Below, piece by piece: positions 19,863 to 55,706 of a DNA stretch of 64,000 nt. The position numbers and the translations under genes are program-made. Position 1 is the stretch's first letter. Each line of letters starts with the position of its first letter. This DNA comes from Iphione sp. A-MEVVRFRX5 (Eukaryota): NCBI GenBank assembly GCA_976226885.1, contig OZ320321.1:25606001-25670000 (forward strand), given 5' to 3'. The notes under the pieces are model-generated. The model was not told the DNA's origin and did no database searches. It saw only the letters and a list, made by a program, of their open reading frames with translations.

Positions 19863-19939
19863 AGCGTGTTATTACTGCAAACAATGTCACGGCGACATTG
19901 TCGACGTCAGAGCTATAAAGAAATGTCGATGTAAAACAT
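19863..19939 (+). CDS. KCNMA1: Slo1 exon with heme-binding motif (ACYYCKQCHGDIVDVRAIKKCRCKT)
   Basis: ttgcag acceptor, CAT|GTGAGT donor, 77 nt; CxxCH. Confidence 0.96.
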
Positions 19940-20521
19940 GTGAGTATGAAACATTCGGCCTACTGCGCAAAATCATTATAGATCTGCTTTATATAGCTGT
20001 AAAATAAAACCAAAACGGCATGACTATGGACGGGGGCTTAATGCAACAGCACCATATTATCACATTGTTTTCCAGCATGTATTTTCACTGCAACTTTTGA
20101 TAAATAGTCTTGTGCTACCCACGCATTATCTGGACTTACTTCTAGTAGGATTTGATTTTTATCATAGTCTCCTGGAGGAACAATTTTGGTCTAATTTTAG
20201 TCTTTGAGTATAGTCGAATTTCAAAGGTGGACAGATGTTTGATACAACAAATAAATGTATTTTTAAAAAAGATACTGAAAGATATAAAAGAAATTATTCA
20301 AGTTTTCTGCGTTCCTCTGGAAGCTTTCTTTTCCTGTACATTTTGCTAAATGATTTGTCAAAGACTTTTCTTTCAATTCTTCTGTGTCATCACCGTTTTC
20401 CCTCTTTGTCTCCCAACACTTTCTTACAAGTTTCTATTTATTCATAAACCTGCACTATTCTTTTCTGTTTCTCTCTATGTCTCTTTCAGTATCCACTGAA
20501 CTATCACTACCTGACCTCGCG

Positions 20522-20529
<8 letters not shown>

Positions 20530-20588
<59 letters not shown>

Positions 20589-20606
20589 CCTCTCTCTCTC
20601 TCTCCC
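20530..20606. repeat. (CT)n microsatellite
   Basis: About 28 perfect CT units plus a degenerate tail. Confidence 0.97.
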
Positions 20607-23600
20607 TCCCCCCAAATCTATCGACCTAACTTTCGTTACCTGAAACCATTTCTAAACATTTTTGCTCTCTGTTAGACTATTGTTTCAGTTCCAAGCTTAT
20701 ACACTCCGTGTTCGTTATCAACTGTGCTAAATTTCCGTTCTATATTCAATGATTGACACAGGCTTAGGAATCATTTTATGCATAGCCTGCTCATTCAGAG
20801 ATATGTTTGATGACTATATTTTCGATGTTTTCACAAATACAATTTGCTTCTGTCTCCGTGTGACGAAATGCTTTTCTCATTTGTGAAATGAGTGCTTTGT
20901 TGTATACTTAAAGTTCACTTCACTATTTCGATTTAAGTTTACGGAAATGGCAAAGGTACTTTAGATTCATTTTAGTTCAATGTTATCTTTGTTTATGGTC
21001 CTTGTTTGTAGATCGTCCCACATATGATTTTCTGTTCCATGCTTATCAGTCGTAGCAAAATATGGTGGCTATTTTATCATCATCGGTGTCCATATTGTGG
21101 ATTCTTATGTGTACGTTTGTGTTTTGTCATATATTATGTAACACGTCTGTGTCAATAACCATATTTTTATGCATATTGCAATTCAGAAAGTTCTGACACC
21201 ATCATCACTGGATATTCACCAGGGATTATCAGTGTTCAGTAACCTAGTATAAGTAGCAAATGCTAACATTGCAAAGGTTTAAATAGTGCAACGTACCAGT
21301 CCACGCTGCATATAAAAGGGCATGGATATTGTAGTTAGAGATTATATCAAAGTCCTTTCTTCAGTATTTAAGATTTGCTGTCCTGCAGACTAGTAAAAAG
21401 GAGGGCGGTGTATCCTGCAGACTTTAGATTACATGAATGTCATTAACTAGACTGGGCCCATGGAAAAACTATTAACATATTCGGCTTACTGAACTGGATG
21501 CAAATGTCTTTCGTAAGTATCGGTCAGTAATTGCAGTCCATAAAGCTTAAGGTAACTGCAGCATAACCGAAAAATGAATCAAATTTACAATTTATAATCT
21601 GACTCAAAGTACAGTAGTACGCTACGTGCACATACCTCATTTATATATTCGACTCCTCTTCTGTTTGCAAGGTGGAAACATAAGTGCTTAGAAATGTATA
21701 CAGATATAGATAAACTATTTGTATTCTTCAGAAATCAACAGTATATACACAGTCTATCACCCAAGCCAGTTACGCATTTAGTGAAATGTCCACTTTGGAA
21801 AGCATCACCGCATCGAACAAAATCAATATTATCAAGGAGATGATTTCCTGGAAGGACGTCGTTCCTTGCAATGGATACAAATTTATACCTAATAATTAAT
21901 GGTCTGCCCAAGAAATCACTCGTTCCAGGGAATAAAACATCCCTACGGTTGTCGTCAAGTAAATAGATGCTCATTGGCCTTAGATGAAAATTACTACTCT
22001 GCAGTATACGCCAACCTTCAGTTGTTGTCCTATGGACACTAAACAAATTGAACAATGACCCTTCAAACCTTTTAGTTCTCAAATAACAAGGTTCGGTGTT
22101 TTCACTTTGTCAGGTGTCACTGATAAATGCAACAAGAAACTTTCGAATTCCTATTCTCCTGGTTTGTTATGGATAAAGTTTCAATTATGAACAGAAGATA
22201 AATGATTTGTATCTGTAGAATAGTAAACTAATATGGGTAATCACTAGATGTGAAAGCACTTAAGGCATAAAACACATTTGGCATAGATATTATGACATTG
22301 GTGCAGTACCTTTTATTTAAAGAAAACTTTTAATGTAAGCTTGGTAATAGTGCTTAGGCATGTGTTTAATTAATAACAGTTAATTGTTTACCACAGGATT
22401 TAGTTCCCCAAATTCCTAAGATAAATATGCTAGCAATGTAGTAGACATGGTTATCTTTTGTTTGAAAATTACCCTAGATAATCTTTTGATTTTCTAGTGT
22501 AGGGAGTAGATATGTGTAACGTATTGTCTAGAAATGCACTCTGAATTAAAATAATCTTTACGTTACACAGCACAGTGCCCCATAGGATTATTTCATCTGT
22601 CGCCAAGTGTGTTTTATATATGTCATTATGGAACAAGTTTGGATCCTAAGGCTGTGCATGCGTGCAATTTACATGGTTACTAATGCGATATCTTACATAC
22701 AGTGACCGTCAGCACAACTGTCTTTGTAGTAAAGCCTTGTTGCTTTGAAGGTCAAAATGATCTTTTGACTGGCTGCATTGCCATTTCCAATCTAGTGCTA
22801 GGTGATCTAATCTGGCAGAACCAAAATTTTAAGGCCCGGATTCCTGGCCTTGCTGAACGAACCGGGGTACATGGTGCTCCACGCCAGAAACAATTCACAC
22901 CTTTGAAACGCACACCATACCCAACATGCAACCTAACCAACTTGTACTACTGTTAATTCGAAGACACAAAACCCTTAACCACTATATTGGCATGATGTGT
23001 AACAGCTTTGAAACAAATCCATCAGGAACTACAGGAACTAAAGGAGTGAAAAGATAACTTGGAGTGAGTTGTCAGTAGTATGAGTTGGTAATAGTACGAA
23101 TTATCCCAAATCCCTAGTAGGATTATCAAGGAAGATTCAACTGAACGTGTAAGCTGATCTGTTATTCCTCTTCAAATATTCTCCAGATTATCTCCGATTG
23201 CAGGGGTGTTCATCTAATTGCCCAATTAATGTCTTGCAAACGGTCATTTATGATTCATGTCAACTGAGGAACAGTATTGCATCATTTGCCTTCCAGGTGT
23301 TTTTTTTTCGTATGAGGCTGCACAAAAGTTTGTTCTGCATCAAATCAGTTGCAATCATTACAAATCCCTTGAATGTTCCCCGTGTGGAAACTTATTCCTT
23401 ACTTCAAAAATGAGCGTCTGCTTCCCCAAACTCTCTGTGTTGCGACCATGACTTAGTTATGCAAACTCTGTTATTTCGTTTCCGTTGGTTTGGTAAGTTT
23501 ATAATTATGGACTGTTCAATATGAAAACATTCATTCGTTACACGATAAATGTTACTCTCCAAAAATTGATCGGCTCTAGGGGTCCAATATGATTGGGTGC

Positions 23601-26600
23601 TTGTGTCTGCCCTAACTGCTTCGATAATGAACGTTGTCATGTCAGTGACATTGTGCTATGTTTAACAGTATTTACGTGCTAGGTATAACAGTGGTACTGT
23701 GCTATGTTTAACATAGGGCATGTCTTTCTAATTTAAACAGAGTCTTTAATCACTGTAACTACGAAATATTAATCCTATTGGGGCACAAACCATTGTTGAG
23801 TTACCACGGTTCCTTCAGTATTGATTTGATAAATATAAGCTGTCTTTCCTTTAGGGATATTTATATTCCAAATTATTTGCAGATTAAGCAGTTTTATGGG
23901 TGATATATATGAAAAAAAGCTCCTCTTGAACCAAAATAAAAATTTTACAGAATCTGAGGCTGTTTAGTGTACTCGGCTTTGGTCTGAAGGCCTCATTTGG
24001 TAATGACGGTGGTGCCTTGAGGCACCATTCGCCCCAGTAGCGTTAATATACAACAGGTGTCATTTTAGCAAGTGTAGGGACAATCGTGGAGTTCTATACA
24101 GTCCTATGGACTTGTGTGACTTGTTTGCGATGTAAATGATGGTGCCATTCCTTTTTAAAGGAATTTAACCACTGTTTAACATCAGACTTTGTCATTGGAC
24201 TGATATATGCATATATACAGACTTTCATCCCGAGTTATGCAGTACAATTGGAGACGATGTGGAAATCAGGTTTTTCCGAAACCCTATCCGCCACACCAAA
24301 AAAACACTAAAAGCAAATGAAATCTTGATTATTTTGATTAACGCAGTATCAATTAAGACCAACCAACTCTGTACTCCAATATTTTATTTGAACCAACAAC
24401 TTATATCTACCACATAATGCATTTGTCCTTTTCATAATTTCCAATAAATGTATGACAGTTGAGTAACTCTGAATAGAACAATGCAATCTTGGAAATTGGG
24501 TCACTCTGTACTTTGTTTGAAATCTGAACTAAACCACATCACCCCTGTACAGTATGTGTCCACCCTACATGTATCTATTGTAGTCTCATGCCTGGTTGCA
24601 CCTACATAACGTGCTCGGTGGTGGTTCCTGCCCTCTGAGTGTTTTATGGTCACAGTCCTTACTCTTTTTTGCACAACGGGGCGAATGGGGTAGATGTATA
24701 GATATTCTGTCTTTGTCATATATAGCCCCAGGTCCTACAGTCCCAAAGCAAATTGAAAAGCGGTAAAAAAAGAAGAAACATTCTGATTGAAATTCTCAGC
24801 TTACCGACGGGGAGCATCTATTCAAAATTTGTTGATTCGAGCTGTTATTTCAGGAGGAAGGGAAAACAAGTTCTAACATTTTGGCAGTGAAAACATTCCC
24901 AGGGCCCCTCACCACCGGCATCACTAATGTGGGATGGACATTAAGGACAGGCAAGATTTACTCAAAACTGCAGTTTTGCCTCTGGCAAACAGCAACCTCA
25001 CTTCTGCGGTTGACCAGAAAATAACGCTCAACTGGATATCCACAAGAGAATTGGAGGACAAACTGGTTTCCACGTCACGTCTGAATATTGCATGCTGTAC
25101 CAAAGATGCCAACTGTTGTTATGCCACTAACACTAACCGTTTTGTTTGAACAGTGAAAATGTTCAAAAAAGGAGCGAACGCCCTGATAGGTACTGTGCCT
25201 TCTATTCCTCTCCTATGTATGCTGTATCTACCTCATTGTTAATGATAAGCCTTCCTCATGGCAAAACAAATACCTCTTCTTCAAGTGTGCAGTGTGTCCT
25301 GTGCAATGATAATTTTCGTTGAGATAACGACCTGCAGAGCTACGACCGATATTATCTAGATTAAGTGTGCTTCTGCAGAGTAACACTAAATGTGTTCTAC
25401 TAGAGAGCTTTCAGTGACTTGACTAGATCTAGCGCCAATTCTACGTACTTCACATATACATATATGGCGAAGTTCTAGTGTTTAGCCTGTTTCAGTACAA
25501 CTTCTGCCTAAGCAAAAACTTCAAAGGCTTCTGAGGCGATATCAAGTTTAGCTGTACTGCTTCGAGTAAGAGGGTGCTCTATTTAAGCTCTTTTAGTCTA
25601 CACCCACATAATGTACGAACGATGTAAACTCAATGTGAGATGTCGAGTTGTATTAGAGTCTAGATGAAGTTCTGCCCTGAATTCCCGCTCCTATTCATAG
25701 TTCTACACTCTGCACTCTGAGTGCGATTGTTGTTGTGACCAGTTCACGCGTGTCACGATGCAAGACGTTTTTTGTAACCTTTTTTTTGTCTATCCCAGTC
25801 CCCTTCCCCCTTAACCCATATTTGCAGATCCGTACATACAGCAACATATACATACGTATTACTTTCACAACCTATTCCTCCTCTCCACGCACTTCTTCTT
25901 ACCCTTTTTGGGAGGGACATAATGTCATTTCCTCTCTAAACAAATAACACAGGTGCATTCTCATTGCTGGTGAAGCTTTGCATGATAAAATAAAGCAATT
26001 TTGACAAATAAATCGAAGAATGTTTTTCAGACTGTTCCTAATTCGATGCCAATAATTTACACTTTGGCCCTACAAAAATAGTGTTCCCCTGGTATTTCTT
26101 TTTAAATAGAAGTCTATATAAATGGGTGAATAGAAGGAAACAATACGCAACTACACATTTTTTAAAGAAAAAATAATGGAAATGACTCTTTCCATCGTAA
26201 GAGTAATTGCCCAGGGACCATACATTTTGTAAAGGCAATTTGTACTAGGAGATTTTTTACGAACCCACAGCAAACAGCAAACCTAGATCAAAAAAGAGGT
26301 TGAAATGAAATTTCACTGGAAACCAAATTTGAAGTCATCCTGGCTGGTGTATCTATACTGTCGTTTACCAGTGTTTTCATAAAGTAGCAAAAGGGGGCAC
26401 TGAATCAAGAATGCATTTTGAGATTTTTGGGTTTTTCAAAGTCGGCAGTCGAAAAGTACCTGTCCCGGTCCAGGCCATAGATGAAGTACGTTTGTATGTA
26501 TGTATGCATGCGTGCGTGAATTGTATCTCAACCCTACAGGTAGGACTGCCATGTACGCTTGTATGTGTGTACGCGTGCGTGCGTGCGTGAGTTCAATCTC

Positions 26601-26663
26601 AATCCCTGGCAGGACACTGCCGTATGGTAACATAAGTCACATGTGCGCTTGTTTCTGTTGCAG

Positions 26664-26699
26664 ACAGACATTCTTTCTCAGACCTCTTTGCTCTAGCTG
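26664..26699 (+). CDS. KCNMA1: Candidate 36-nt cassette exon at the STREX-equivalent site (YRHSFSDLFALA)
   Basis: cttgtttctgttgcag acceptor, CTG|GTGAGT donor, phase 1-1. Confidence 0.7.
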
Positions 26700-29212
26700 G
26701 TGAGTTTTGTCCTATCTCTAGGAACGATAGCATGAAGTAGTAAAAAACCAAAGGCATTGATTTGCCTGCAGTTGAAATACATCATCCATCATAGTAAAAA
26801 AAACTATGCAACCACAAAATGAAAAAAGGATTCGTTCCACGAGTAATCATATAATAAACTTGTCGAATTACCTACTCCTATCAGAAATAAAGATAATGTA
26901 AATTTGTCTAAATTTGCTATCGCCATATTGGCAACATTAAACGCATGCTCAATTCAGTCCCTGTTATTTTAGAGGAAGCTCATTTGCAAGGAATGTTCTA
27001 GATTAATAGTTTTTAAACTACCCGCTAAACGTTCCAGTAGGTTAAATTTAATCTAGTTGCAACAATTTGCTGAGCAGAAAGCTCTTGCTGTTTAGTTCCC
27101 GCATGAGACCAATAATTTATTAGATTGATGCGGTTGGATTTTTTTGTGCATGACTGAATACATGTATATATAGCTTTTTTGCTTTTAATATATGACAGAA
27201 ATGAAAGAAATTTACCAATACCAAATTCAAAAAAAGAAGAGACGACGAATAAGTAAAAGCAATAGAATTCCTCCCAATACATGTATCTATTTATCTACCC
27301 ATACAATTATAAAAAGATGGTTCCTATTTAATTATATACCTTGATCTGAAGCTGATCAGGTCTTTCCTTGTTTCAGAGACTAGGAATTCATGTAAATGGA
27401 GTTTTGTATTCTCTCGTCACCAGCCGTTCTCCCTGTTGTGACTGCCGCAGTTTTATTTAAGTTTAGATCCAGTGGATGTCGTAAAAGGCTTTAAGTTTTT
27501 GAGAGCGGAGAAAAGATATATTTCTCCCTTGATACCCATCCTCTGGTTGCATGTGGCTCATGGGAACTTCACCATAGGCACTCGATAGGAGCTAAAAATG
27601 TCAATCCTAAAATCACAAGGACAATTTAAGAGAAAAAATAATATGTCACGAGAAAAAAAAACGTTAGAAAAGCTTTAATTACTTTCACATGCATAGCTTA
27701 AATTAGTTCCACCGAATTACGTTCGTTATTTCTAAATAATTTAGGACTCTAAGCTCTCCGCCCCTGTCTATCAGCCCCTCAGTTTTAACTCTTCACGCCC
27801 TGCGTGTCTCTCTCTCGATTCGTCTCTACATTTGCATGGCGCTATGCTCTTGCCATTACTTCGACTTTAGTAGAGAGTTTGATGTTGTATTTTGTATTGT
27901 GCTGGGAGATAAAACCGTAATACAAGTACATGTGTTAAGAGAACAACTATATGAGCTACCTAGCAAGAATGGAAACTTTAGCAATCTGTTAGTAAGACTT
28001 GTGGTATACAATTCATAACAGAGAAAGTGACCAGAGAAAGATAAAGATAAAGGCTTGTACCTACTGTAGTAGGTAGTGATATTTCTAAAACATCGAACTT
28101 GTCTTGGACATAGAACTGAATTCAGTGCCTGTATCAATGCAGTTATAGGTACAACATGTAGTCCAATCATAAAGTCTGGGGAGGAGTAAGAAGAGAATGT
28201 ATATCCATGCATAGACTACCCACGGATATGCTTCAAGATATTATCTTATATAATCATATTAATTGTTATGAAAGAAACACTGACATTATAATGATAATGA
28301 TAATTAATCTATTATGGTTTGTCTATGTGCCTCTTCCTATTAAGAAATGACATATATTGCTTGTGACATGTGACCTCTTCACCTCTGGCACCCCACAGCC
28401 TTTACTGCCACACCCTTCTCCTCTGACACCCATCTTTATATACAGTATATATATTTATATATGTATGTACATGGCCCCAGGCTTTGTCACCTTCAGAGCC
28501 TGGTGTTCAATCCTGCATTTTTTGCTCCTGCTTTTGATCCACTGTTCACTGCCCTCAATGTATGTACTGCTGGTATATTCTATGTGTAAGCATAATCATG
28601 GTAATACCATATGGACCTATACATTTCAGATTTTAAAGAAAGACAATAGACAATGACATTGAATATCTAATCTCTGTTTTGATTAACATTCTTACTTGAA
28701 AAAATTTTGTTGACTTGAACATACTTTGTTATAATAATATAGATTATATGTAGCAATTAATCTACTATGAGTACTGTGGAAATGATCATTTCTTGTTGTA
28801 TTTGATGTTTTATTAAAATAATAACTAGTAACAGCGGCATGCAAATGACTTACCAAAAATACTTTGTTCTAATTGGTAACAGTTAACCGAAGATATTCAA
28901 TTCTTTAATACAGACATGTTATATTCATTAATAATTCGCTCTGTGCGAGAATTGGCCGCTCTATTTCCATACTGTCGTCGATGATTCTGTACTAAACATG
29001 ATAAAAGCATGCAGTACAATACAATAATATGCTGAAGATGTGATGTATATACAAAAACGTATATACATGTGATATTGGACCCAAAGAGAAAAGACGAACA
29101 ACATTGAAACATGCTTTTGGTCAGAACGAAATGTGAAAAGAAAGGAGAATGTTCAAATTAGTGAAGATCGTTTCAAGCACGGATATTGTGTTATGTGTCT
29201 TTGTTTCTATAG

Positions 29213-29281
29213 CAACGGCGAAATTTAGTGCGGTTTCACCATCCCCATTGGAAACGCCTGACGGAAAGCATCGGGAAATGT
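29213..29281 (+). CDS. KCNMA1: Candidate 69-nt cassette exon (xTAKFSAVSPSPLETPDGKHREM)
   Basis: tgtctttgtttctatag acceptor, TGT|GTAATT donor, phase 1-1, S/T-P rich like the linker. Confidence 0.5.
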
Positions 29282-31481
29282 GTAATTACAAAACGAAATT
29301 TTCTAATCTTGAAAGCAAACTAACGATACTGAGTCATTCTGTCGGACTTCCCTACCGTTCGGATTTGGTTCTATTCAAAGGAATACAATTAACCCTTACT
29401 GTTTCTTTTTGCTTTGGGGTTAGCGTAATAATTGTACATAGTGCCTATTTGCTTTTACTAACTCCAACCAGAAAAAAAACTAACATATCTATTGTTGTTG
29501 TTATTGACTAGTTAGCATTATTCCCATAATTTGGTGATCATATTCTTTGAACGAAATTCACCTAAATCTCTCTTTTTTCGAGTTTACAATTGAAGTTGTA
29601 TTTGTAGTTTGGTTGTTTACTTTCCGAAAGGAGCTGTAACTGTCTGAAAAGAAGAAACAGAATACGCAACTCGGTCTCGTTTGAACATTAGTCTATAGGC
29701 AATGATTCCTGTAGTTTCTTTGGCGTTTCATTAAGCGACTCTAGTCAGGCAAACTATATTCAAGTACGGTAGTTTATTCCTGTGGCAATTTCGGGGGAAA
29801 GTACAGTGGAAATAAAGGAAACACATGTGACCCATGGCAGAAATACTTCATCCCTTGCAACGGTTATTCTATGCCTGCACGTAGAAAAAAAAGAGAAACT
29901 TACACAGGAATTTATACAAAACGCTCAACCTTTTATAATTTCTTTTCAACAGAGCCAGTACAGTGCATCTTCGAATTCTGTATCCCTTTCCATAAGGTGT
30001 AACATTTTTAGCTTATAGGTTGCCATGTGTTGACAGCAGTAACTGCTTTCAGGAATGAAATATTTGTGCTGTCATCCATGGGTTTCCTCTGGTGTACGCA
30101 CACCTCTACTTCCACTGTGCTTATAAGAAGGTGAAACGTGTTAGACATGTAAGAAAAGTAGTGTAAGATCTATGTGTGTATATTGTTTGTCTTGATGTGA
30201 ACATTAGTGTTGACTGTATTGTACAAAACCTGTGGGACGCTTACGCATTTATTTCTGAGACGATTGTTTAGGTTTGCACAAGTATGACTAACACCTGCTA
30301 TGTCTTCATAGCAAAACTTTATCACTATGTGCAGAGGAGTTAGTGATCATACAGCGAGAATTGGCTTGCTATTGATGGCTGGTAATTGTACCATTGCAAC
30401 TGGTGCAACAATTTAGTATGTATATAAGTACATGTAACTTGCCTTTTTGTTGACAAGCATGGTGGCATGGCTAGAGAATCTCAATGGCCATAACAGCAGA
30501 AGGATATGGGTCAGTGCCCTTATTAACTACAGGAGGTAATGACGTTTGCACTAGTGCGGCATTGTCTAAGCTGGACATCTACTAATTAAGTAATTTTATT
30601 CATTCCAGGATTCTCTCTCGATATGCACACATTAAAAATACAGTAGAAATTCTGCCTGAACCAGACAACCCAAAATTCGAAATGAAATCTGAGAAAAGAA
30701 AATCTTCTAATTTCATGTGCAGTAAAAACCCCCCAATGGGACCAGGCATGGGACTGGCCAACTTTGGTCTATCCCTTGAGTGGGTCTCTTTAGAGGGCTG
30801 GTATGCAAAATAAGAATATACATGCTTGTTTTTTTTGAAAATCATAGTCTTTATAAAGGTAGTTCAGCCACACGGGTGGGTCTCTAAGTAGTTTCTACCG
30901 TTAACACGTTGGCTATGGTTGACAAGTGACACTCCAGACTACCAGCTTCAGCTAGGGACTCTGGTGTAGCAAGTGTCTCCATATACATGTATACACGTGT
31001 GTGCATATATATATATATATGTAAACATATAGGTGGTATAAGTCATCATCTTTCCTCCGCAGGTTCACCTTCTCTCTATCAGTATATGCTTCTGTGTGTT
31101 GGTCACCTGTGCCTTTAAGCCTTTTCCTCACTCTAGGTTAAGCCCGGGACATCACCTTGATAGCCAAGTTATAGCTGTGCGACAAACTGTTGTCCCAGAC
31201 AGTGGACATTATTTGCAATAAGATATTTCTGTAAGCATAAGTAGCAACCACATACCCACCCACCCACCCACCTCCGTTGACTTCTTGATGTAGTCAATAT
31301 TGTAATGGTCATTTCCCACTTCTTTATATCCATCAAGATGAAGGGTTAACGGGTCTACTGTCAAGTAAGCAGAATTTTCATACTCTTTTTTTTAAATCAC
31401 TGAGAATTAAACCCCGCGGGCCAGATTTTGGATTGTGCCCCCTCGCCCCCTTAACATCCGCCTTGCCCGTGATGAATGGCC

Positions 31482-31650
31482 ATGATGCTGCTGATGATGA
31501 TGATGCCTATGATGCTGATGTTGATGATGATGCCTATGATGCTGATGATGATGATGATGCCTATGATGACCATGTCCTCTGGCTTGAAGGCAATGATGAT
31601 GATGTTGATGATGATGACAATGATGACAATGTTGATGATGACGATGCTTT
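31482..31650. repeat. Degenerate (GAT)n/(CAT)n trinucleotide repeat
   Basis: Produces the poly-Asp, poly-His and poly-Ile ORFs in the track. Confidence 0.92.
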
Positions 31651-32824: not shown

Positions 32825-32893
32825 CACTTAACAAAAAGAGCGTGACTGCTGCTGGAACTGAACTGACGTCCCAGTCTTACCCTGCAGACTCCG
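32825..32893 (+). CDS. KCNMA1: Candidate 69-nt cassette exon (xLNKKSVTAAGTELTSQSYPADS)
   Basis: Very strong acceptor tttgtctttttttttacctgcag, CCG|GTACTG donor, phase 1-1. Confidence 0.55.
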
Positions 32894-34077
32894 GTACTGA
32901 TCCCATCCCATTACTTTTCTTGTGTGTCCGCTGTTCAAGTGTGGTTCGTTTGTTCTGTTTTTTTTTTCTAGCAGATACCTACAGAAACCTGTATAAAAAA
33001 TACTCTAAGGTAGAAGTACGTTGTAGATGGTATAACCTCTTCTGGTCACTGTTGTTGACTTCTGGTTAAAGACAATTGGTGGTCATATTACTAGATTTGA
33101 GACACAACGCTACCATTCGGTTGTAAGCTTATTGTTGGCATGAAAGGCACGTATACATTTTAGAATCGAATTACAATCGTTATACATTCTAAGTTCAGCA
33201 CTCACTTACGGCTGCTCTCAATACCCCTGTCCGTTGCTTCAAGTTTTTTTCTTGGAGCAAAAATTTCACCTAGGTCATCAATGCATTATCATGATGTTAC
33301 ATGTAATTGGTATCTTTGTGTCTCCAGCCTTTAGTAGTGACCATAGTAGTTACAGTATTCTGTAGCCAGATGGTGTCAGGTTTAATATGGAAAGTCTACA
33401 CCCGCGAGACTGTCAAACATGTAAACAGTATGTACTTTTATAATTAGGCTGTTTTTTTTCATAATTTGTGTATTTTCATGATCAGGATGTAAATGGCTAA
33501 GATTAGGTGGGATAGGACCTGGCACACATCTTGCTACTTTACTTTGGACAACTGGTTAAGGCAAGCTGTTGAAGAAATACTAGATGCTGGCAGTCTAGCT
33601 CTGAAATTAACCTTTTCCAATCTAGATAATTAGTTTACCAGAAAAAGCCCATGATTTTTCAAGTGTTCATCTCATTAATTAATTCTCAGTTGTTTTGAAC
33701 CGAACACCTGATCCAGAATGTAGTCGATGACTATCGTAGTTCATCGCAAAAATCAATGGTAACGAAAGGCACGTTTGGAATGATTAATCCCAAACACATT
33801 ATCGCAGAATTGAGGTCTAAAAATAGTCGTGCCATCAGAGAGGAGAAGCACTTTACCGTATCACGCAGCGATATTCCCTCGTGTTCCCTGAAACCTCCAC
33901 TGAACTCGGGTCAATAACCAAGAATTCCAAATGTGCAGTAACCAATCACCGAGATATAAAGGCTTAATATCGATAATGAATCACCAAGAAATTAAGGATC
34001 TAAAATTATTATTAAATTACCAAGAAATGATTCAGTCATCAAGAAACTTCGGTGCTGCATTGCAGAGGCAAAGAGCA

Positions 34078-34130
34078 TTTGGCGCTGAAGTAAAATACCT
34101 TTTTGGCGCCGAAGTAAAATGCCTTTTTGC
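34078..34130. repeat. 24-bp tandem repeat, about 2.2 copies
   Basis: tttggcgctgaagtaaaatacctt / tttggcgccgaagtaaaatgcctt. Confidence 0.8.
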
Positions 34131-34559
34131 ACATCACCAAAGTAGTTGTCCCCCCTGTGTTTCAGTGAAAAAAAAATCACAGAGTCAGCTGGGCACACAA
34201 CCAATGCACGTGGCAGTGGTTCAGGTAGATACTCCAAACCTCCGTCCACTTGGTGTGGGGTCTGGTGATTCGGATGTGCTGTGTAGCTGACAGAGAATTC
34301 ACCATCTAAAGGAACATACTAGCTCCAGCCCAGTTCGGTTCTAACCTTTTATTAAAATGAAAGCAACAGTTAGTACAATATATCTTAAACCATTTAAAAC
34401 CAGATGTATACTTTAATTGATTGCTGATGGGTATTCTTGATCCAATAGATAATTACCATGACTACCTAGAATATTTATCAGTCTATAAAGAGAGAGGGAG
34501 AAAAAACAGAGTTAGGCAGAGCAAAGAAGGAAGAAGTGGAGGTAGAAGCTTTGGAGCTG

Positions 34560-34720
34560 CTGTCCACTTCCCCAAAGAGAAAAAAGAAATATCCACATCC
34601 ACAAAAACAGGCCTAGTTATGCGCCTGCAATGATACAACTGTTCGATCGCCCTTGCAACTCCCATTGTCTCCAAAGTTCTTGCCTGGGAGTCACATTTTC
34701 TAATTTCCTTCTATCACCAC
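34560..34720 (-). pseudogene. Possible decayed non-LTR reverse transcriptase fragment
   Basis: Frameshifted minus-strand translation PRQELW/...GVARAIEQLY...V.V.ISFF loosely resembles the RT segment before the GVRQG motif. Confidence 0.25.
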
Positions 34721-34868
34721 AGTAGCTATTGCTTTCTGCTCTTTCATCGACCCTCGGTATATCCTTTCATCTGTAAAGGCAATATACTTTCATGTCAACT
34801 CTCAGATTCGTTTGTCACGAATGAATATATACTTACGTCATAATTCTGTATCTTCCTAACCATTCTAG

Positions 34869-34886
34869 TGGAAGATTTACAATCCG
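34869..34886 (+). CDS. KCNMA1: 18-nt micro-exon (L/V)EDLQS, likely homologue of vertebrate post-STREX LEDEQP
   Basis: cttcctaaccattctag acceptor with CTAAC branch-like motif, perfect CCG|GTAAGT donor, phase 1-1. Confidence 0.75.
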
Positions 34887-35848
34887 GTAAGTCCGACTAC
34901 AAGAAGACACGGTAGAACCACATTGACAAAGTCACAGCCCACTATTAAATATTTTTGTACAAGGTCAATCATGTAAATTCTTCACCGTAAATGGTTTCGT
35001 TATCGTAAAACACAAAATTAATGTCGCGTTCGAAATTGTGAAACCGTCATAATACTAAAGCTGGTTTCACTTACACAGTGCAAAAAAAAAACCCTAGGCC
35101 GTTGTTACACTGCTACGACCACTGAGTTGTATTTGCATTATGTGACCCGTCACCATGAGATAGTCCCACTTGATGTCCCACGTTATGTTCAGGTTAGGTC
35201 CCACGACAACATCAAGTGTAATGCGTTGTCTGCCTGAAATATGGGCCTGGCTCACTGTTGTCTCCAGTAGCATAGATCCAGTTTCGTCAATTTATGTGCA
35301 GTTAAACATGATCCAGAGAAATCTACCGGCTCATTTGAGAGCATTGTTGAGTGTGGTGGAGTTTACAATGCAAGCAAACCATAGTAAAAGATATAAAATG
35401 TGTAATCATTGAAGGTTATCACTTAGCTTTGTTAACGAAAAACATTTCTGACCGCCAGGGACAACTCTGTAAACAAACAATCTGTAAAGTAGCTCTCTGT
35501 GATTAGATAGTCTTTCAAGAAGACATCTACAGTTTGAAGCTGCTCTTCACTTGCAATTGCTCTTCAGGATTAGTGGTATACAGATTATGGTAAACAAATT
35601 AGTTTGCCTTTTGAACCTGTTTATCATAAACCACCGTCATTTTGGCATTGACTCTCTGTTTATAAGTGGCGTTAACACGATTTTATTTCCATTCTAGACA
35701 CCGGTTACATGCCGCCTTTTTCTGAGGACCTTCAACCCTTTCAAATTTGTGTTCCAAAAATCATTCAACAGATTTCATTTTCGGATTCCTTTTCTGAAGA
35801 ATTCAGGACCCCTACGGAACAATTTCTTTACCCTGAATGTTTTTTCAG

Positions 35849-35884
35849 GCAAGACGCGTGACATTCCACGTCAGAAAGTACAAG
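35849..35884 (+). CDS. KCNMA1: 36-nt linker exon (GKTRDIPRQKVQ)
   Basis: gaatgttttttcag acceptor, AAG|GTATTT donor, phase 1-1. Confidence 0.65.
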
Positions 35885-37004
35885 GTATTTCCATGGGCAA
35901 GGTTGACAATTTTCCCAAGATCCTGAAAATTATGTTACTCAGTTGGTTATGCATCGCAAGATGCCATTCTGATGGAAACGGCAGTGTTTGCTTCTGTGTC
36001 ACTGAATGTGATGTGCCGTACCAATAACTCACTGGTAAACGTGCAGTCCTTAATACAGGACCTTTCGAAATCTCAGCGCTTTACATGGGCTGGTGCTACG
36101 TTTATGGCAGATGAAAGTTCGACCAGAGGCAAAGACAATTGTAGGTCAATTGCAGGTTTGACCATAAAAAAAGTGTTGCTTACAGTCATGTCACATTCGG
36201 TGAGAACGGGCCTGCGTGATTGTATTGGCTGCACAACACTCCACTGCAATGGGTCGATGCATGTCTAAAAGAAGTTCTCCATCCTTCGGGACTTTGTACC
36301 TTCATCAAGAGAAAAAACAAATCCAATCTGATGCCAAGTGTTGTATTTTTATTGATTCGGTATAGATGTGTACACTGGTCTATTGCTTATTCTGATCCTT
36401 GCAATATCGTGTCGTACCATTGTCTCTCGAGACAGAGAAACGTCTATTAGGAAGACGATGTAATAAGGGAGAACAGTTCACTTAAAGGAGGTGAAACCCC
36501 CCCCCCGCCCCCCACACCTCCAAAAGGCAAACGGGTTGACGCGATATTAGCAAGGTGATTCGAGTAGGGAGACTTGAAAGGTGTCTTTGGAGGGTCAGGC
36601 TACCAATTCTAACAGTGTGATTTTGTATTCTTCGTCATTCTTCAACCCAGGAAAGGCATCAGGCCTAATCTATTTACTTTCATTTACATACTCTAGTTTT
36701 CGGTACTGTTTAACAGATAATCTAAATAGACAAATCTCTAGTCTCAAGTAGCAGTTGCAGTAAACTTAATGGTGTACGTATTGTGCTCAACCAAATTGTT
36801 AAAAAATATCTCAGTCACTCAGCAAGTAATATAACTCTTCTTCTCGTGATAATTATCATTTCATATATGCCCATTAATGTAACATTGATAAAGATCAACC
36901 TATTATTTGCCTCAGATTTCAATGGGTCTTTTCCGTATGCCATACAGAGTGTCAGAGTATAGAGAATATAATTATACGGTTCTGTTTACCGGATCTTCTT
37001 CCAG

Positions 37005-37095
37005 TGAATATGCCTTTCTCCAAGATGCCGAAGGAGAAAACACCACCAATCAGCCCGCGACGAAGCGGTGGCAGAATTGGTTCTTCTGTATCAAG
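37005..37095 (+). CDS. KCNMA1: Linker exon (xNMPFSKMPKEKTPPISPRRSGGRIGSSVS), phase 1 to 2
   Basis: tcttcttccag acceptor, perfect AAG|GTGAGT donor, 91 nt; supplies the phase change needed to join 19939 to 42743. Confidence 0.85.
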
Positions 37096-40000
37096 GTGAG
37101 TCACCCGTTGACTAGAAGCGGCTATGATATATAAATATATGTATAGAAGATTAGTTACGTAAGTATACACTTTCCAGGTTCAGCTTCTCACCAACCTGGC
37201 AAATGCTCTCCGTCCTCCGCTGATGATGATAATGTCCTTACCGCTCGATATAAAACAGCAAATGGTAGGCAAAATCATGCTGCTAACAGTGAAGAAATTC
37301 CTCACTCTGTTGTACATATGACTTGAGCTCAGAGAAAATTGGAATAGAAAGTCTTTGTGTTTTTGAGAGGTTTGTGCCAATTCTCTTTCAGAATGTTCTT
37401 CATCGTAATGCTTTTATTGTTCCTGTTGTCATTTATTTCCAAGTTTAAATGTTAATAATTCTGATGTTACAGTATCTTTGCGACACCTAGGCTAAACTTT
37501 ACACTGACAGTATTTGTGCACATGTAACCTGTTGTATATTCTTTTACTGTGAATTTGCCTCCGTCATATTTCAGCCATTCTCCATAACAGTAAACTTGTC
37601 TGTGCGGTGGATATTGATATACTGCGTACTGTTTTCCACTCTTTCAGTTTTGGTAAACTCACATTGGCCTTTGCGTTGGGCCCATGGTAAATGTTCGAAG
37701 CTTTGTGACCTTCAGGTCTTTGACCTTGTATAACCTTGGATGCCCTTGATATGTCTGATCTTCTAGCCCTGACCCAATGCCCTTGGTATGACCTTGGATG
37801 TGGCTCTTCATGGGGAACACTTACCATATGTGACTGATATTTGCTCTTTAGAAACAGTCGCTTCCCGTTTTTGGGTATTTTCTCTTACACCAAAGTCACC
37901 ATTTTCGTTCACGTGAGGTACCCTTGAAAGACGCGAACTCTCAAACCCTACACCCGTTTCAGAACAAAAAACCATTCCCTATGTGAAGCCTCCTTACTTT
38001 TCGGACATTTCGCTTAATGGCTGTCTGGCTGTGGGTTATCATGGTAGTTGACCAATTCTATTACAGTTATAGAAAAAAAAAACTATAACAAAATGGGTAA
38101 CGGTTCCATACATATGCATCGTGTTTGGGAAACGTGTAATCGAAAATTATCTTTCAAAAAGGTCTGTATCCTAAAACAGTACACCTCGTTTCCAAGGTAA
38201 CCTAGTCTCAACCTTCCAAGTATTTTAAATTATTTTAATTTTGCATAATTAAGTAAAGGTGCATATTTATTTCCTCCATCTTTTCTTTAGCTTTTTCCCG
38301 ATGAACCAAACAAAACCTAGTCTGGACTCGTTCTGTGTATAGTTCAGAATAAGTTAAATGTCATGGGGTGTTCTTATTTTGATTAAGGGAAATCATTATA
38401 GAATGTCCCAAGGGTGTCATACGATTATCTGATTCTTCTGTACTATAAACAGGACGAACCAGATAAACTGGGAATCTCCTTAAGGGAAGGGAACTTCAAT
38501 AGTACAGATGACAACTTTGGACCACCCCTCTTTTGCTGTAAGAGTAAGCCTCCCTGGAAACTTACTAACAGTGCATGCAAAACATACTAGACATTACATA
38601 CGTGCAATCAGATAATGTAACTAGACATGCATGGTGATGCTGAGAGATTTGACAATGAGAATAAAAAATAGAAATGCAGGCTTTTCATATATTAAACACA
38701 GTACAGAAATTGTCATTGCTAATTGCAGGTCTAGCATCATTCCTTTTAGAATGTCGGCTAGAATCTAGCAGACACAATAATGTCAAACTTTGCAGTCAAA
38801 TATCATTCAATAAATTTTATGCATTATGCGATGAAGCCTTAATAGCCCAGGAACAGCCGGGATTGAGGTGCAAGAAGTACTTATATTGATGACATTATGA
38901 CTAGATATGGGATAAATCCATTCATCTGTGGAGCTCATCTAGAAGCTATGGTTCTGTGTTCGAATACCTCGTGTGTCCAAATGAGGCAGAAGTGAAAGGC
39001 TCGTTCTATGTGTCTGCATATGTGTGTGTTAATTTTGGCCTGCTGTATGTGTATATACTGGTAGACAAACTTGGTCTATAATGTCTTTGTCTGAATGGCT
39101 TAGATGTAATGGGGTGTGGCAGTCTATGGCCATGTTGGTGTACATACATAACAGTTGGCGTGTTCAAGGTGTGGTCGTGTCGCGATATGCTGAATGTAAT
39201 TGTGGCGGTGTAGACGATGGTGGATATCGGTAGCCTTTCAGAATATACCGTAAAACAGACAGTATACAAAAAAGTCGCTATTTAAAAATGTTTGCAATGT
39301 TCATATGTAAGCATAGTAAATCTATATTATCTGGATAGATATAGGTGAATAGAAATGCCAAGTTTGGACAGGTCAATTTTCGTCCCTCTTCTGTGGTAGT
39401 ATCCTTACAGCCTAGGGCTTCTACAGAAGGTCAAGCTACCGTTTGGTTCTGGACAAGCCTAGTTTTATCATGTGGGTTGGTATTTAAGTGGGTTTCCACC
39501 GTAAATAAGATTGCTGTTTTGGTATACAAGTACAAGTGCATAATAATCAAATGTGTACTATTCATCGGTCTTCAGGACCTGCTCTTTGTCAAAGTGTTTG
39601 TTTGCATGTTGGCTGTCACTCTGCCAGTTTAGATGTGTGTCTTGTGCAGGTTGGCAAGCTTGCAGGATATGAATATGGCATTTTGCAACATAGTAGAGTA
39701 TAAATACAGTATTTTGTAGGCGGTTTTTTTACATGTACATGGCATTTTGCAGCTTCTCTGTAGAATAAGATAAAAGTGTGTATGAGAGTTGAAAAATGTA
39801 TTGCAGATGATTTGCCAGTGCGCTTTCCAATACTCATGCATACGTGTCACAATATGACAAACATGCACATCCGTGATTGTTGAATGAATGTCTGCATATT
39901 GAATTTAGGATGTACGTAAGCTGTAAGTGCGAATGAGAAACCTGGATTCTTTAGATCGCAGGCCTGTTTTTCATGTCAAGTAGTGTTATTGTACTGTCGC

Positions 40001-40105
40001 CATTACTCTGTCAAGGGCATCATTTGTCTCTTAAAGCAGCTCCTGTCTTCATCATTTATCGACTTGAGCTCCACATTTGCATACTCATTGGTGTTTGCAT
40101 TTCAG

Positions 40106-40168
40106 CTCCATGGCCATTTCCGAGATGACTAAACCTCGCGAGGACCCGTCTAAAAACATCGAAATGAA
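40106..40168 (+). CDS. KCNMA1: Linker exon (SSMAISEMTKPREDPSKNIEMK)
   Basis: tttgcatttcag acceptor, GAA|GTATGA donor, 63 nt, phase 2-2. Confidence 0.7.
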
Positions 40169-41164
40169 GTATGAACCCACTATTTTTGGTTTGCAGAACT
40201 CTGACATGCTACTCTCCCGAAGTTTTCTGTAATGAATCTATGTCTCTCGTATTCTCTCTCTTATATTTAAGTTGTCTGTATCTCTGTCATCTCAGTCTGT
40301 GGTATTTTATTGTTTCACCAGAAAATGTGGACCATTTAGATGAACCAATGTAATATATAAACGCGACCCAGCCCATCTCATGTCAAACCATTTCTAACAT
40401 CTCTGTAAGTGTCGATCGTTCTGTAACGTTTACTATTGTATGTATCGACGAGGAACAAGTACAAAAAGGGTTATTGCACGTAATTCTTTTTCTTTTAGAC
40501 ATCCCATGTTTAAAAGATGTTTTCCTTGCTCGACAGGCTCACAGAAACAAGTCATTTCTTGTTGTTAGCACCAAGCAATATTGCTTGATTATTCTCCAGA
40601 GACAGGCAAAACCAAACCTAACATAAATAACCTGGTGTGTTACTTTCTACTAGTCATCCATATTACTCTTCCTTTTGATGTATCTCTCAACCCTCTAAAA
40701 ATTCTGAATCCTTTTGGTTATCTAGATGGTCCACCTGCATGGGTGTTCATGGAGCATTGAGCCCTGACAATCTCCTATACATCTCTAATGATTTCCTCTA
40801 ACTCTTAGAGAAAACGAACCATTCATTTTAGCACACTTCCCAGCCATTAGGCAAATTCCATCGCTTCCAACCTAACACATAACAGCAAGCAAAATTAACG
40901 TAGTCCGGTTATTCGTATAACGATATCTAATTAACGAGACATACGCTTCTACTTGAATTCTGGAGATGGGAGGACAACCTGAAAGATATTAGAATTTCAC
41001 ATGCTTCTCAACTACATTGGTGGAAATATTTGGATATGTACTGGTTGTCATTTGGTTTGGCTAATACCGCGAGAAAAAAAGTGAAGTGCAATGAGGACTG
41101 CATACCAGGGAGAGCAACGAGTTTGATCTTTTCTCTATTCCATATTGTTTCTTGATAATTTTAG

Positions 41165-41284
41165 AAATGCTTATGCTGATCCAAGAAAGAAAAATATTGG
41201 TATTAGTCTACAATCTGCATTACACATCGAAACACCAAATGGCCGTTACAGAGCGAAGCACACACCTGCGAACTGCAGTGTTGG
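41165..41284 (+). CDS. KCNMA1: Candidate 120-nt cassette exon (NAYADPRKKNIGISLQSALHIETPNGRYRAKHTPANCSVG)
   Basis: Pyrimidine-rich acceptor ending aattttag, TGG|GTATGG donor, phase 2-2, open frame. Confidence 0.45.
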
Positions 41285-42009
41285 GTATGGACAATATACG
41301 TTTTTCCTTGGAGAGACAGTCAAATGATAATCTGTACATGTCTGAACATAATCTTCCTGTAAGGAGGCACAAATCCACCGGCCACTATCTTTCTACATCT
41401 CTATTTTATGTCCGAAGGAAAATCGCCACAAGGCAGGGAAGCTCAGGGAATTTCAGAAGAAATTTATTTCTTATTTCGCTTTTTTCCAATCTTTCACATA
41501 GAGATACAGGTGGTACTTTTGGGTGAAGGCTTCTGTTATTTTTGCAGTATCAGGGAATCGCCTATTTTGTCGATTAGACATCTCTTCAAAGTAATCAATA
41601 CAGTTGGTAAATATTTATATTTACCAATGTTATTGATAAATTACTGTGGATGTTAACACTCCATTGTCATACAGTAGAATATTAACTGCTGACTAGCATG
41701 AAAACGCTACATTTTTTGCCCTGGTTATTCCATGTGAGAATGAGATAACAATTTGTCAACATAGGGAAAATGTATTAGCAGTGTATATAATATATGTATA
41801 CTCAGGATTTATTAACTCAAGACATGTAATAACCTTACAATCTAACAGTTTACCCAATTACTAAAAGTCTACCACAATTTATTTGCAGAGAAAATATTAT
41901 GTAGGAACGCTATTGGCGATAGAATGAGTGTCATAAAGATTTCCTTGTTTTACAAATTCTAAGTCTAAAATTAATAGAAAGACTGATCTCTGCAAGTTGA
42001 TTTATTGTC

Positions 42010-42075
42010 CTACTTTCTGCGTTTGACCTGAGACCTGAGTTTTCTACTTTCTGCGTTTGACCTGAGACCTGAGTT
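42010..42075. repeat. Perfect 33-bp tandem duplication
   Basis: ctactttctgcgtttgacctgagacctgagttt twice. Confidence 0.95.
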
Positions 42076-42203
42076 TTCTCATTACTAATGACGCTCATCC
42101 GTATTCGCCGCCCCCCCCCTTGCTCAAGCAGCTTTCATTGACACGTTCATTTTCCTATACAGCATGAAGCGCGGCCATATTGGACGTCTCGTTTAGCATC
42201 CCG

Positions 42204-42219
42204 CCGCCAGAGGGTGGCA
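42204..42219 (+). promoter_or_regulatory. CTCF-like motif in a CpG-rich patch with GCCAT (YY1-like) words
   Basis: CCGCCAGAGGGTGGCA, close to the CTCF core consensus. Confidence 0.25.
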
Positions 42220-42742
42220 ACGTCCCATGCGGGAAAGGCCCGGTGCGCCACCTGCATGACGAGCATGGAACTAACATCATCATAGCTCAACACAAAGAAT
42301 TTAAAGCAAAAGAAAGACAAAGGAACAAAAAAGAAAAAAGAATTGTGTATGGATTGAACTTCTGTCCACTATCCCTCACGTCCGTTATAGGGCCTTGAAA
42401 GCAAGACGTCGGCGCCATCTTTTGTTTAAACAGTTGCTAAAAGCAGCGGGTAAAGGTTTATCCCAGGTCCACTTCCTAAAATGAGCTGAGCATGTATTTT
42501 GTGGTTCATCGCGATAGACCTATCAGAAATAAATCATATACCAACGGACCAACCCAAGAAAACCTTTGACCTACTATTAAACTGTTTATTCATGGATTAC
42601 TATGCACAGTCTGGAGAGATGGCGCTCTTCGTTCTCCTTTGTGGCCTGTACCTGACGTCGAAATGTCTCTTCTAGAAAAAAAAAGATTCTCTTTCGTTTG
42701 ACTACAGAGCGATTCGTCGCATTCCTGCTTTTCTTGCTACAG

Positions 42743-55427: not shown

Positions 55428-55706
<279 letters not shown>

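What the first reader, a model, noticed from the sequence alone, without database searches (positions are those of the whole stretch)
19940..42742. Combinatorial small/micro-exon cassette array in the RCK1-RCK2 linker (STREX-equivalent locus) with no STREX
The heme exon (ends phase 1) and the DSTGMFHW exon (starts phase 2) are 22.8 kb apart. Between them I find an ordered, phase-compatible set of exons: 36, 69, 69, 18 and 36 nt (all phase 1-1), one 91-nt phase switch, then 63 and 120 nt (phase 2-2). Treating the seven symmetric exons as independent would allow up to 128 linker variants. None resembles the Cys-rich vertebrate STREX. The peptides are S/T-P and basic-rich (SPSP, TPPISPRRS, PRKK), so they look like a phospho-regulatory module. 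This would be an independently elaborated splicing hub at the site used by vertebrates and insects.
Basis: partly seen in the sequence, partly recalled or inferred. Interest (0 to 1): 0.72.

Follow-up and report, generated by a model that had tools for sequence, protein, structure and literature searches.

The report
Conserved mini-exon array in BK linker
The stretch of an annelid BK potassium-channel gene that encodes the flexible link between its two calcium-sensing domains holds about ten tiny exons that a second worm species has kept.

Summary
The window carries an intact BK (Slo1) gene on the + strand. The heme-motif exon (19863-19939, ends phase 1) and the DSTGMFHW exon (42743-42884, starts phase 2) are as described.

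There are 134, 13 and 43 of them, with similar counts on the antisense strand and in shuffles.

The decisive test was a 20-kb collinear contig from a related worm whose introns are otherwise unalignable. The 120-nt exon (source of PRKK) and any 18- or 36-nt exon between 32.9 and 37.0 kb are at background.

Five conserved exons were missed: a second 36-nt exon, then 15, 27, 39 and a tentative 18 nt. A 33-nt exon lies in the next intron.

All ten small exons are multiples of three in both species and are open in the phase their position requires. Four show only synonymous changes. The 91-nt exon is the obligatory linker exon, not a cassette.

Alternative use is inferred, not shown. Wasp gene models have a comparable cassette array at the same site, so this is a new member of a known kind.

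The parts
19863..19939 (+). Heme-motif (CxxCH) exon, 77 nt. Ends in phase 1 with a carried T. Constitutive.
   Evidence: Sequence read. 83% nt identity to the related contig, with 11 differences in synonymous and 2 in nonsynonymous codon pairs. Also present in L012 and L014.
20938..20955 (+). e18: tentative 18-nt exon, phase 1-1, carried base G. The acceptor is a weak AAG.
   Evidence: Collinear match, E 0.014 within its interval. AG and GT are kept, the length is 18 nt in both species, and there are 2 synonymous and 1 nonsynonymous differences.
25154..25189 (+). e36a: 36-nt exon, phase 1-1, carried base G. The most widely conserved cassette candidate.
   Evidence: 90% identical 90-nt block. 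The peptide is identical, with 2 synonymous changes. It sits collinearly between the heme exon and e91 in three further contigs, with both splice sites invariant and variation only at third codon positions. Single copy in the genome.
   Evidence: 92% identical 72-nt block. The peptide is identical, with 2 synonymous changes. TGC directly before the acceptor AG in both species. Single copy.
27377..27391 (+). e15: 15-nt micro-exon, phase 1-1, carried base T. It starts with AG, so joining it directly to the heme exon (carried T) makes a TAG stop. After e18, e36a or e36b (carried G) it reads through.
   Evidence: Exon and both splice sites are 100% identical between species over about 28 nt. Heads and tails are listed. 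Single copy.
29213..29281 (+). e69a: 69-nt exon, 60 nt in the relative, phase 1-1.
   Evidence: Weak collinear nt match. Protein score 44 against a shuffle maximum of 34. The first nine residues are identical despite several synonymous changes, including a switch between the two serine codon families. The 3' half diverges. AG, GT and the carried T are kept.
31338..31364 (+). e27: 27-nt micro-exon, phase 1-1, carried base A. The acceptor is AAG.
   Evidence: Conserved block. The peptide is identical, and all 5 nt differences are synonymous. My own reading of the sequence printed finds stops in the other two frames.
   Evidence: Acceptor region and first 20 nt are 86% identical. The donor is kept, and the length difference is a multiple of three. 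Protein score 42 against a shuffle maximum of 35.
37005..37095 (+). e91: 91-nt phase-switching exon (1 to 2), 94 nt in the relative. Obligatory linker exon, counterpart of the vertebrate constitutive linker segment.
   Evidence: Conserved in the related contig and in L014. It is the only conserved exon that converts phase 1 to phase 2. Spliced to the heme exon, the junction codon reads Leu, as in the vertebrate protein P0137.
37648..37686 (+). e39: 39-nt exon, phase 2-2, encoding a hydrophobic peptide.
   Evidence: 85% identical block with AG and GT kept. One Leu codon differs at two bases yet stays Leu, and the replacements are conservative. My own reading of the exon sequences printed finds only phase 2 open in both species. 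Single copy.
40106..40168 (+). e63: 63-nt exon, phase 2-2. Probable.
   Evidence: Collinear match, E 9e-8 within its interval. 63 nt in both species, with acceptor and donor kept, but only 59% nt identity in the exon. Protein score 50 against a shuffle maximum of 33.
42743..42884 (+). DSTGMFHW exon, 142 nt, 151 nt in the relative. Starts in phase 2 and ends in phase 0. Constitutive.
43881..43913 (+). e33: 33-nt exon, phase 0-0, in the next intron and so outside the finding's range.
   Evidence: 86% identical block. The peptide is identical, and all 4 differences are synonymous. AG and GT are kept.
41165..41284 (+). Not supported.
   Evidence: Nucleotide and protein similarity to the collinear interval of the related contig are at shuffle level. 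No block there. Unique sequence, not a repeat.
32900..36999 (+). Not supported.
   Evidence: No collinear match better than E 0.67. The tested candidates score at shuffle level. Unique sequence.

Best explanation
This is the part of an annelid BK (Slo1) gene that encodes the disordered RCK1-RCK2 linker. The obligatory path runs from the heme-motif exon to the 91-nt exon to the DSTGMFHW exon.

The two introns between them hold nine further small coding exons. Seven are in phase 1-1: 18, 36, 36, 15, 69, 27 and 69 nt. Two are in phase 2-2: 39 and 63 nt. A tenth, of 33 nt in phase 0-0, lies in the next intron.

Because every one is a multiple of three, each can be included or skipped without breaking the frame. 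Most likely several are alternatively spliced cassettes that vary the length, charge and candidate phosphorylation sites of the linker, as STREX does in vertebrates and linker cassettes do in insects.

Shown: the exons exist, are under coding constraint, keep their splice sites and keep frame symmetry. Inferred: alternative inclusion and any effect on gating.
For: Gene identity comes from Pfam Slo-like_RCK, Slowpoke_C and Ion_trans_2 on single exons, and from PDB Slo/BK chains at E 7e-29.

The related contig ERR14368249_35174 is collinear from 18.0 to 43.9 kb of the window. Its introns are unalignable apart from a few short blocks. Every block with E below 1e-5 in the 22.8 kb is bounded by AG and GT in both species.

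Each block is open in the phase its position requires: 1 before e91, 2 after it, 0 after the DSTGMFHW exon.

e36a, e36b, e27 and e33 have 13 nt differences, all in synonymous codon pairs.

Lengths are multiples of three in both species for 10 of 10 small exons, including the two that differ in length (69/60 and 69/63). Only 1 of 5 constitutive exons measured is a multiple of three. My Fisher exact calculation from those counts gives p about 0.004.

e36a recurs with invariant splice sites in three more assemblies. The four blocks tested are single copy.

Two observations are only suggestive. Upstream flanks are more conserved than those of constitutive exons, with my means from the table being 0.65 against 0.54. 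UGCAUG is more frequent on the sense than the antisense strand, 14 vs 10 in the window and 16 vs 4 in the relative, and one copy upstream of e36a aligns between species.

Precedent: predicted wasp isoforms differ by at least five cassettes directly after the heme motif.
Against: There is no transcript evidence of any kind. No RNA run was listed, and no transcript-derived protein was found.

The reading with every exon included is also open, so symmetry does not prove skipping.

e15 gives a stop if joined directly to the heme exon. That fits constant inclusion of an upstream exon as well as it fits regulated splicing.

Only one relative covers the whole region. In the more distant L014 contig only e36a and e91 are detectable.

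e18 and e63 are weakly supported. The flank-conservation difference is small.
Confidence: 0.6

Rival explanations
1. All the conserved small exons are constitutive. The annelid linker is simply encoded in many tiny pieces, and there is one linker isoform.
For: Reading through all exons in order gives an open frame, by my reading of the heads and tails. e15 needs an upstream exon that ends in G to avoid a TAG, which constant inclusion would guarantee. The fully included linker would be about 180 residues by my count, similar to the wasp linker. No RNA data contradict it.
Against: 10 of 10 small exons are multiples of three in both species, against 1 of 5 constitutive exons. Two of them have weak AAG acceptors. 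Seven of the ten, all of them exons that are clear in the close relative, are undetectable in the more distant L014 contig, which keeps e36a and e91. BK genes of insects use this site for cassettes.
Confidence: 0.25
2. Apart from the 91-nt exon, the candidates are chance AG..GT open frames in a long intron.
For: This is the best reading for the 120-nt frame and for any 18- or 36-nt frame between 32.9 and 37.0 kb.
Against: For the ten exons listed, chance does not explain conservation in unalignable introns, kept splice sites, the correct phase and the excess of synonymous changes.
Confidence: 0.04
3. The conserved blocks are non-coding elements, such as intronic splicing or transcriptional regulators or small RNAs, rather than exons.
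For: Some short conserved blocks lack exon features: 25475-25504, 32605-32627 and 40721-40741. e15 is invariant at the nucleotide level, so its conservation cannot be assigned to coding constraint.
Against: For most blocks the differences fall at third codon positions of the required frame. Indels are multiples of three. Conservation ends at AG and GT.
Confidence: 0.06

Closest known systems
Vertebrate KCNMA1 splice site C2, the STREX insertion site
   Same: Same junction. The insertion point is directly after the heme-motif exon, at a split codon, and upstream of the constitutive linker segment. The annelid 91-nt exon matches that segment in position, length (31 vs 32 residues) and junction Leu (compare, P0137). 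Inserts there are symmetric exons. The position of the vertebrate intron is from my own knowledge, not tested here.
   Different: STREX is one cysteine-rich exon of about 58 residues. Here there are seven small exons of 5 to 23 residues with no cysteine at all, and two more after the 91-nt exon. No similarity to the vertebrate linker was found. P0137 lacks STREX, so STREX itself was not aligned.
Insect slowpoke linker cassettes (RefSeq models of Polistes fuscatus, up to isoform X50; Drosophila slo alternative exons, from my own knowledge)
   Same: The largest variable block among 30 wasp isoforms lies at residues 622-701, directly after the heme motif. It breaks into at least five independently present or absent segments of roughly 7 to 23 residues, including one of 12 and one of 23 residues. 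Those are the sizes of the annelid 36- and 69-nt exons.
   Different: Similarity is marginal and limited to two exons: e36a to wasp 659-666 and e63 to wasp 702-711. These hits are collinear, with shuffle fractions of about 0.01 each among 20 tests. The wasp isoforms are gene-model predictions.
Convergent alternative splicing at BK domain boundaries (Fodor and Aldrich 2009, Annu Rev Physiol 71:19; listed in the references of PMC8567177)
   Same: The general idea is that distant animal lineages place alternative exons at the same inter-domain loops of the channel. My own knowledge of that review, which I did not read here, is that these loops include the RCK1-RCK2 linker.
   Different: To my knowledge annelids were not part of that comparison. 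A full-text search for slowpoke, alternative splicing and annelid found no paper.
Neural micro-exon programme of bilaterians (exons of about 3-51 nt, SRRM4/eMIC-dependent; from my own knowledge)
   Same: The sizes (15, 18, 27, 33, 36, 39 nt), frame preservation, location in a disordered loop of a neuronal protein, and strong conservation all fit.
   Different: The TGC motif next to the acceptor is conserved in both species only for e36b and e63. Tissue specificity is unknown.

Membership tests
BK / Slo1 channel gene | Pore domain and two RCK-type domains with the Slowpoke C-terminal domain | tested here: met
   Pfam Ion_trans_2 (7.6e-15), Slo-like_RCK (2.6e-16 and 2.2e-10) and Slowpoke_C (7.5e-19) on single exons. 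PDB Slo/BK chains at 7e-29. 17 collinear exon matches to a full-length slowpoke.
BK / Slo1 channel gene | CxxCH heme motif at the end of RCK1, and an acidic calcium bowl | tested here: met
   The motif is read in the exon at 19863-19939. The run of aspartates lies in the exon near 55521-55649.
Vertebrate STREX exon | Inserted at the junction directly after the heme-motif exon | tested here: met
   Seven conserved exons lie in that intron. Equivalence of the junction is inferred from the alignment with P0137 and from my knowledge of the human gene.
Vertebrate STREX exon | Cysteine-rich insert of about 58 residues | tested here: not met
   No cysteine in any conserved exon. The largest is 23 residues.
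Alternatively spliced cassette exon | Functional splice sites, and a length that preserves the frame when the exon is skipped | tested here: met
   AG and GT are kept in both species. 10 of 10 lengths are multiples of three in both species.
Alternatively spliced cassette exon | Transcripts both with and without the exon | not testable with these tools
   No RNA run was listed for this DNA, so no reads could be laid. No transcript-derived protein was found.
Alternatively spliced cassette exon | Flanking intron more conserved than around constitutive exons | tested here: inconclusive
   Mean upstream identity is 0.65 against 0.54, my means from the table, and there is no difference downstream. 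The samples are small: 10 and 5 exons.
Neural micro-exons (SRRM4/eMIC type) | TGC motif close to the acceptor, kept across species | tested here: inconclusive
   Kept in both species for e36b (-5) and e63 (-10) only.
Insect slowpoke linker cassettes | Sequence homology of individual cassettes | tested here: inconclusive
   Two marginal, collinear local matches with shuffle fractions 0.013 and 0.010. The other eight exons are at background.

The most novel reading that the evidence does not exclude
The annelid BK linker is built from a combinatorial array of at least nine conserved frame-preserving mini-exons. By my count this allows 512 combinations on paper, or 480 once those that create the stop are removed. 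The array includes an invariant 15-nt exon that creates a stop codon unless one of three upstream cassettes is also included. That exon would be either a built-in splice-coupling rule or a conserved poison exon. Part of the array (e36a, e63) would be older than the annelid-insect split rather than independently evolved.
Probability: 0.2. Interest if true: 0.6.

Novelty: new member of a known kind. Interest (0 to 1): 0.42.

Why it matters
BK channels tune excitability, and in vertebrates and insects much of that tuning comes from alternative exons in the RCK1-RCK2 linker. A conserved mini-exon array at the same junction in an annelid adds a third major animal lineage to that pattern. It also gives exact exon coordinates for RT-PCR or long-read tests. 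Finally, it offers short, defined peptides, including a hydrophobic 13-residue one and several basic or serine-rich ones, that can be tested for effects on gating. On method, it shows that phase-compatible AG..GT frames alone are worthless in a 23-kb intron: three of the eight proposed exons failed and five real ones were overlooked.

Tried and rejected
- RNA evidence: the look-up of sequencing runs listed no RNA run, so read laying could not be used.
- Full-length relatives: a representative search with one exon gave mostly exon-sized fragments. The word search with the full-length hit P0069 listed only wasp and bee isoforms, so no annotated annelid isoform was reached.
- An alignment of P0069 with single window exons, meant as a biased profile, was misaligned by MAFFT and dropped.
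- A word search with the open stretch around the 91-nt exon found nothing.
- PDB searches with the 91-nt and 69-nt exon peptides found nothing.
- An exact-pattern scan for the 15-nt exon block in metagenome contigs found nothing.
- The short contigs L009 and L010 hold only the DSTGMFHW exon. P0273 could not be traced to a contig. L001-L005 cover other exons only.
- No paralogue exists in the genome for an internal comparison.
- The idea that conserved or unsupported candidates are repeats was rejected, because all tested stretches are single copy.
- UGCAUG motifs near e15 occur at similar distances in both species but do not lie in alignable sequence, so I do not count them as conserved.
Exons were searched one by one by reference.
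Full report
WHAT THE WINDOW HOLDS

The + strand carries a BK (Slo1/slowpoke) channel gene. Single exons hit Pfam Ion_trans_2, Slo-like_RCK and Slowpoke_C. They also hit solved Slo/BK structures at E 7e-29. A full-length slowpoke protein (P0069) matches 17 collinear exons between 3.4 and 57.2 kb. I did not test that label. The genome holds a single copy of the gene.

CHECKING THE OBSERVATION

The heme-motif exon is 19863-19939 and ends with one carried base, T. The DSTGMFHW exon is 42743-42884. It begins with one base that completes a codon and ends in phase 0.

The three peptides it quoted fix three of them at 29213-29281, 37005-37095 and 41165-41284.

By itself this observation is not above chance. 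The 22.8 kb contain 134 phase-1 AG..GT open frames of 18/36/69 nt, 13 of 91 nt, and 43 phase-2 frames of 63/120 nt. There are about a thousand symmetric frames of 15-120 nt per phase. The antisense strand gives 113/20/31 and shuffles give 109/11/26.

THE DECISIVE TEST: A RELATED GENOME

A word search with the open stretch around the DSTGMFHW exon found a 58-residue fragment on a 20.1-kb contig of a public run, ERR14368249_35174. Two overlapping fetches of that record (L006 and L008) were identical in their overlap and were merged.

The contig is collinear with the window from the exon at 18.0 kb to 43.9 kb. Constitutive exons are 77-83% identical in nucleotides, and the heme exon alone has 11 differences in synonymous codon pairs. 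Intron sequence is otherwise unalignable. A conserved block inside an intron is therefore informative.

WHAT IS CONSERVED

Inside the two linker introns, every block with E below 1e-5 is bounded by AG and GT in both species. Each is open in the phase its position requires.

Phase 1-1, between the heme exon and the 91-nt exon:
- e18, 20938-20955 (tentative)
- e36a, 25154-25189
- e36b, 26664-26699
- e15, 27377-27391
- e69a, 29213-29281 (60 nt in the relative)
- e27, 31338-31364
- e69b, 32825-32893 (63 nt in the relative)

Phase switch:
- e91, 37005-37095 (94 nt in the relative)

Phase 2-2:
- e39, 37648-37686
- e63, 40106-40168

In the next intron, phase 0-0:
- e33, 43881-43913

Evidence for coding constraint:
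- e36a, e36b, e27 and e33 encode identical peptides in the two species. All 13 of their nucleotide differences are synonymous.
- e69a keeps its first nine residues through several synonymous changes, including a switch between the two serine codon families.
- e39 has one leucine codon that changed at two bases and still reads leucine.
- Where exon lengths differ between species (69/60, 69/63, 91/94, 142/151), the difference is a multiple of three.
- e63 is the weakest. Its length and splice sites are the same, but the exon is only 59% identical in nucleotides. Even so, its protein score of 50 lies far above the shuffle maximum of 33.
- The four blocks I tested are single copy in the genome, so they are not repeats.

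WHAT IS NOT CONSERVED

The 120-nt frame at 41165-41284, source of the quoted PRKK, scores at shuffle level in both nucleotide and protein comparison.

The best-looking candidates score at background.

These stretches are unique sequence. A lineage-specific exon cannot be excluded, but nothing supports one.

The tally is five of eight supported, three unsupported, and five conserved exons missed within the range (one of the two 36-nt exons, e15, e27, e39 and the tentative e18), plus e33 just outside it.

A WIDER LOOK

A degenerate pattern for the e36a peptide hit three metagenome-derived contigs. In L014 the match lies collinearly between the heme exon and an e91 homologue, and five more BK exons lie further along the locus. 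In L012 it follows the heme exon.

The peptide match was imposed by the pattern. The splice sites on both sides were not, and they are invariant in all five sequences.

In these more distant relatives only e36a and e91 are detectable. The other small exons are therefore either younger or too short and diverged to find.

ARE THEY CASSETTES?

This is inferred, not shown.

For alternative use:
- All ten small exons are multiples of three in both species. Only one of the five constitutive exons measured (113, 159, 77, 91 and 142 nt) is. My Fisher exact calculation from these counts gives p about 0.004.
- Two of them have weak AAG acceptors.
- Upstream flanks are somewhat better conserved than those of constitutive exons (0.65 against 0.54, my means).
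- UGCAUG is more frequent on the sense than the antisense strand of the introns, 14 vs 10 in the window and 16 vs 4 in the relative. One copy about 65 nt upstream of e36a aligns between species.
- In 30 predicted isoforms of a wasp slowpoke gene, the largest variable block sits directly after the heme motif. It resolves into at least five independently present or absent segments.

Against alternative use:
- There is no transcript evidence.
- The reading with every exon included is open.

A CURIOSITY: THE 15-NT EXON

e15 and its splice sites are 100% identical between the two species. It begins with AG, so joining it to the heme exon (carried T) gives a TAG. After e18, e36a or e36b (carried G) it reads through. 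This fits constant inclusion of an upstream exon, a splice-coupling rule, or a conserved poison exon. I cannot tell which.

'STREX-equivalent locus' is reasonable. Spliced to the heme exon, e91 gives a junction Leu followed by a 31-residue serine-, proline- and basic-rich segment. The vertebrate protein P0137 has Leu and a 32-residue segment of the same character at the same place. So e91 is the obligatory linker exon, not a cassette, and its composition is an old property of the linker.

'No STREX' holds, since no conserved exon contains a cysteine.

The count of 128 variants has no basis. With the conserved set the paper number would be 512, or 480 without the combinations that create the e15 stop. 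Nothing shows that the exons are used independently.

'Independently elaborated' is open. e36a and e63 show marginal, collinear local similarity to the wasp linker, with shuffle fractions of about 0.01 each among 20 tests. The other exons show none, and none resembles the vertebrate linker.

LIMITS
- One relative covers the whole region.
- No RNA data were available.
- The organism names of the related contigs are unknown to me.
All searches used single exons by reference.
- The literature held no paper on slowpoke splicing in annelids. The general principle that BK splice sites recur at domain boundaries is that of Fodor and Aldrich 2009, which I know from its citation and from memory.

VERDICT

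There is a real, conserved array of frame-preserving mini-exons at the BK linker of an annelid. It is a new member of a known kind, of moderate interest, and its alternative use can be tested directly with the coordinates given.

Noticed in passing
window 43881-43913: A conserved 33-nt, phase 0-0 exon lies in the intron after the DSTGMFHW exon. The peptide is identical in the related contig, and all four differences are synonymous. This would be a further possible splice site at the start of RCK2, outside the finding's range.
   Followed up: partly
window 27377-27391: The 15-nt exon is invariant between species. It makes a TAG if spliced directly to the heme exon but reads through after any of the three upstream exons that end in G. 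It may be a splice-coupling rule or a poison exon.
   Followed up: partly
window 25475-25504, 32605-32627, 40721-40741: Short collinear conserved blocks without exon features (no shared AG/GT boundaries). They may be intronic regulatory elements. The second lies about 200 nt upstream of e69b.
   Followed up: no
window 31470-31691: A low-complexity stretch that reads as runs of Asp codons in one frame. It has dozens of 72-86% identical copies on many chromosomes of the genome, so it is a dispersed or tandem repeat inside the linker intron.
   Followed up: no
window 20500-20610: A CT-dinucleotide microsatellite, seen as Ser-Leu repeats in two reading frames. L014 matched it repeatedly.
   Followed up: no
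L005:1-1932: A metagenome contig (JGI 3300034152) from a relative with very small introns. It holds six BK exons, from the start of RCK2 to near the C-terminus, within 1.9 kb. In the window the same stretch spans more than 8 kb for the first five of those exons alone.
   Followed up: no
P0069 residues 622-701 (wasp slowpoke): Predicted Polistes fuscatus isoforms differ by at least five cassettes directly after the heme motif. Two of them, of 12 and 23 residues, match the sizes of the annelid 36- and 69-nt exons.
   Followed up: partly
P0003: A 2,359-residue protein made of a repeated unit of about 50 residues scored E 1.6e-35 against the RCK2 exon through eight short stretches. This looks like a compositional or repeat artefact, not a BK relative.
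   Followed up: no
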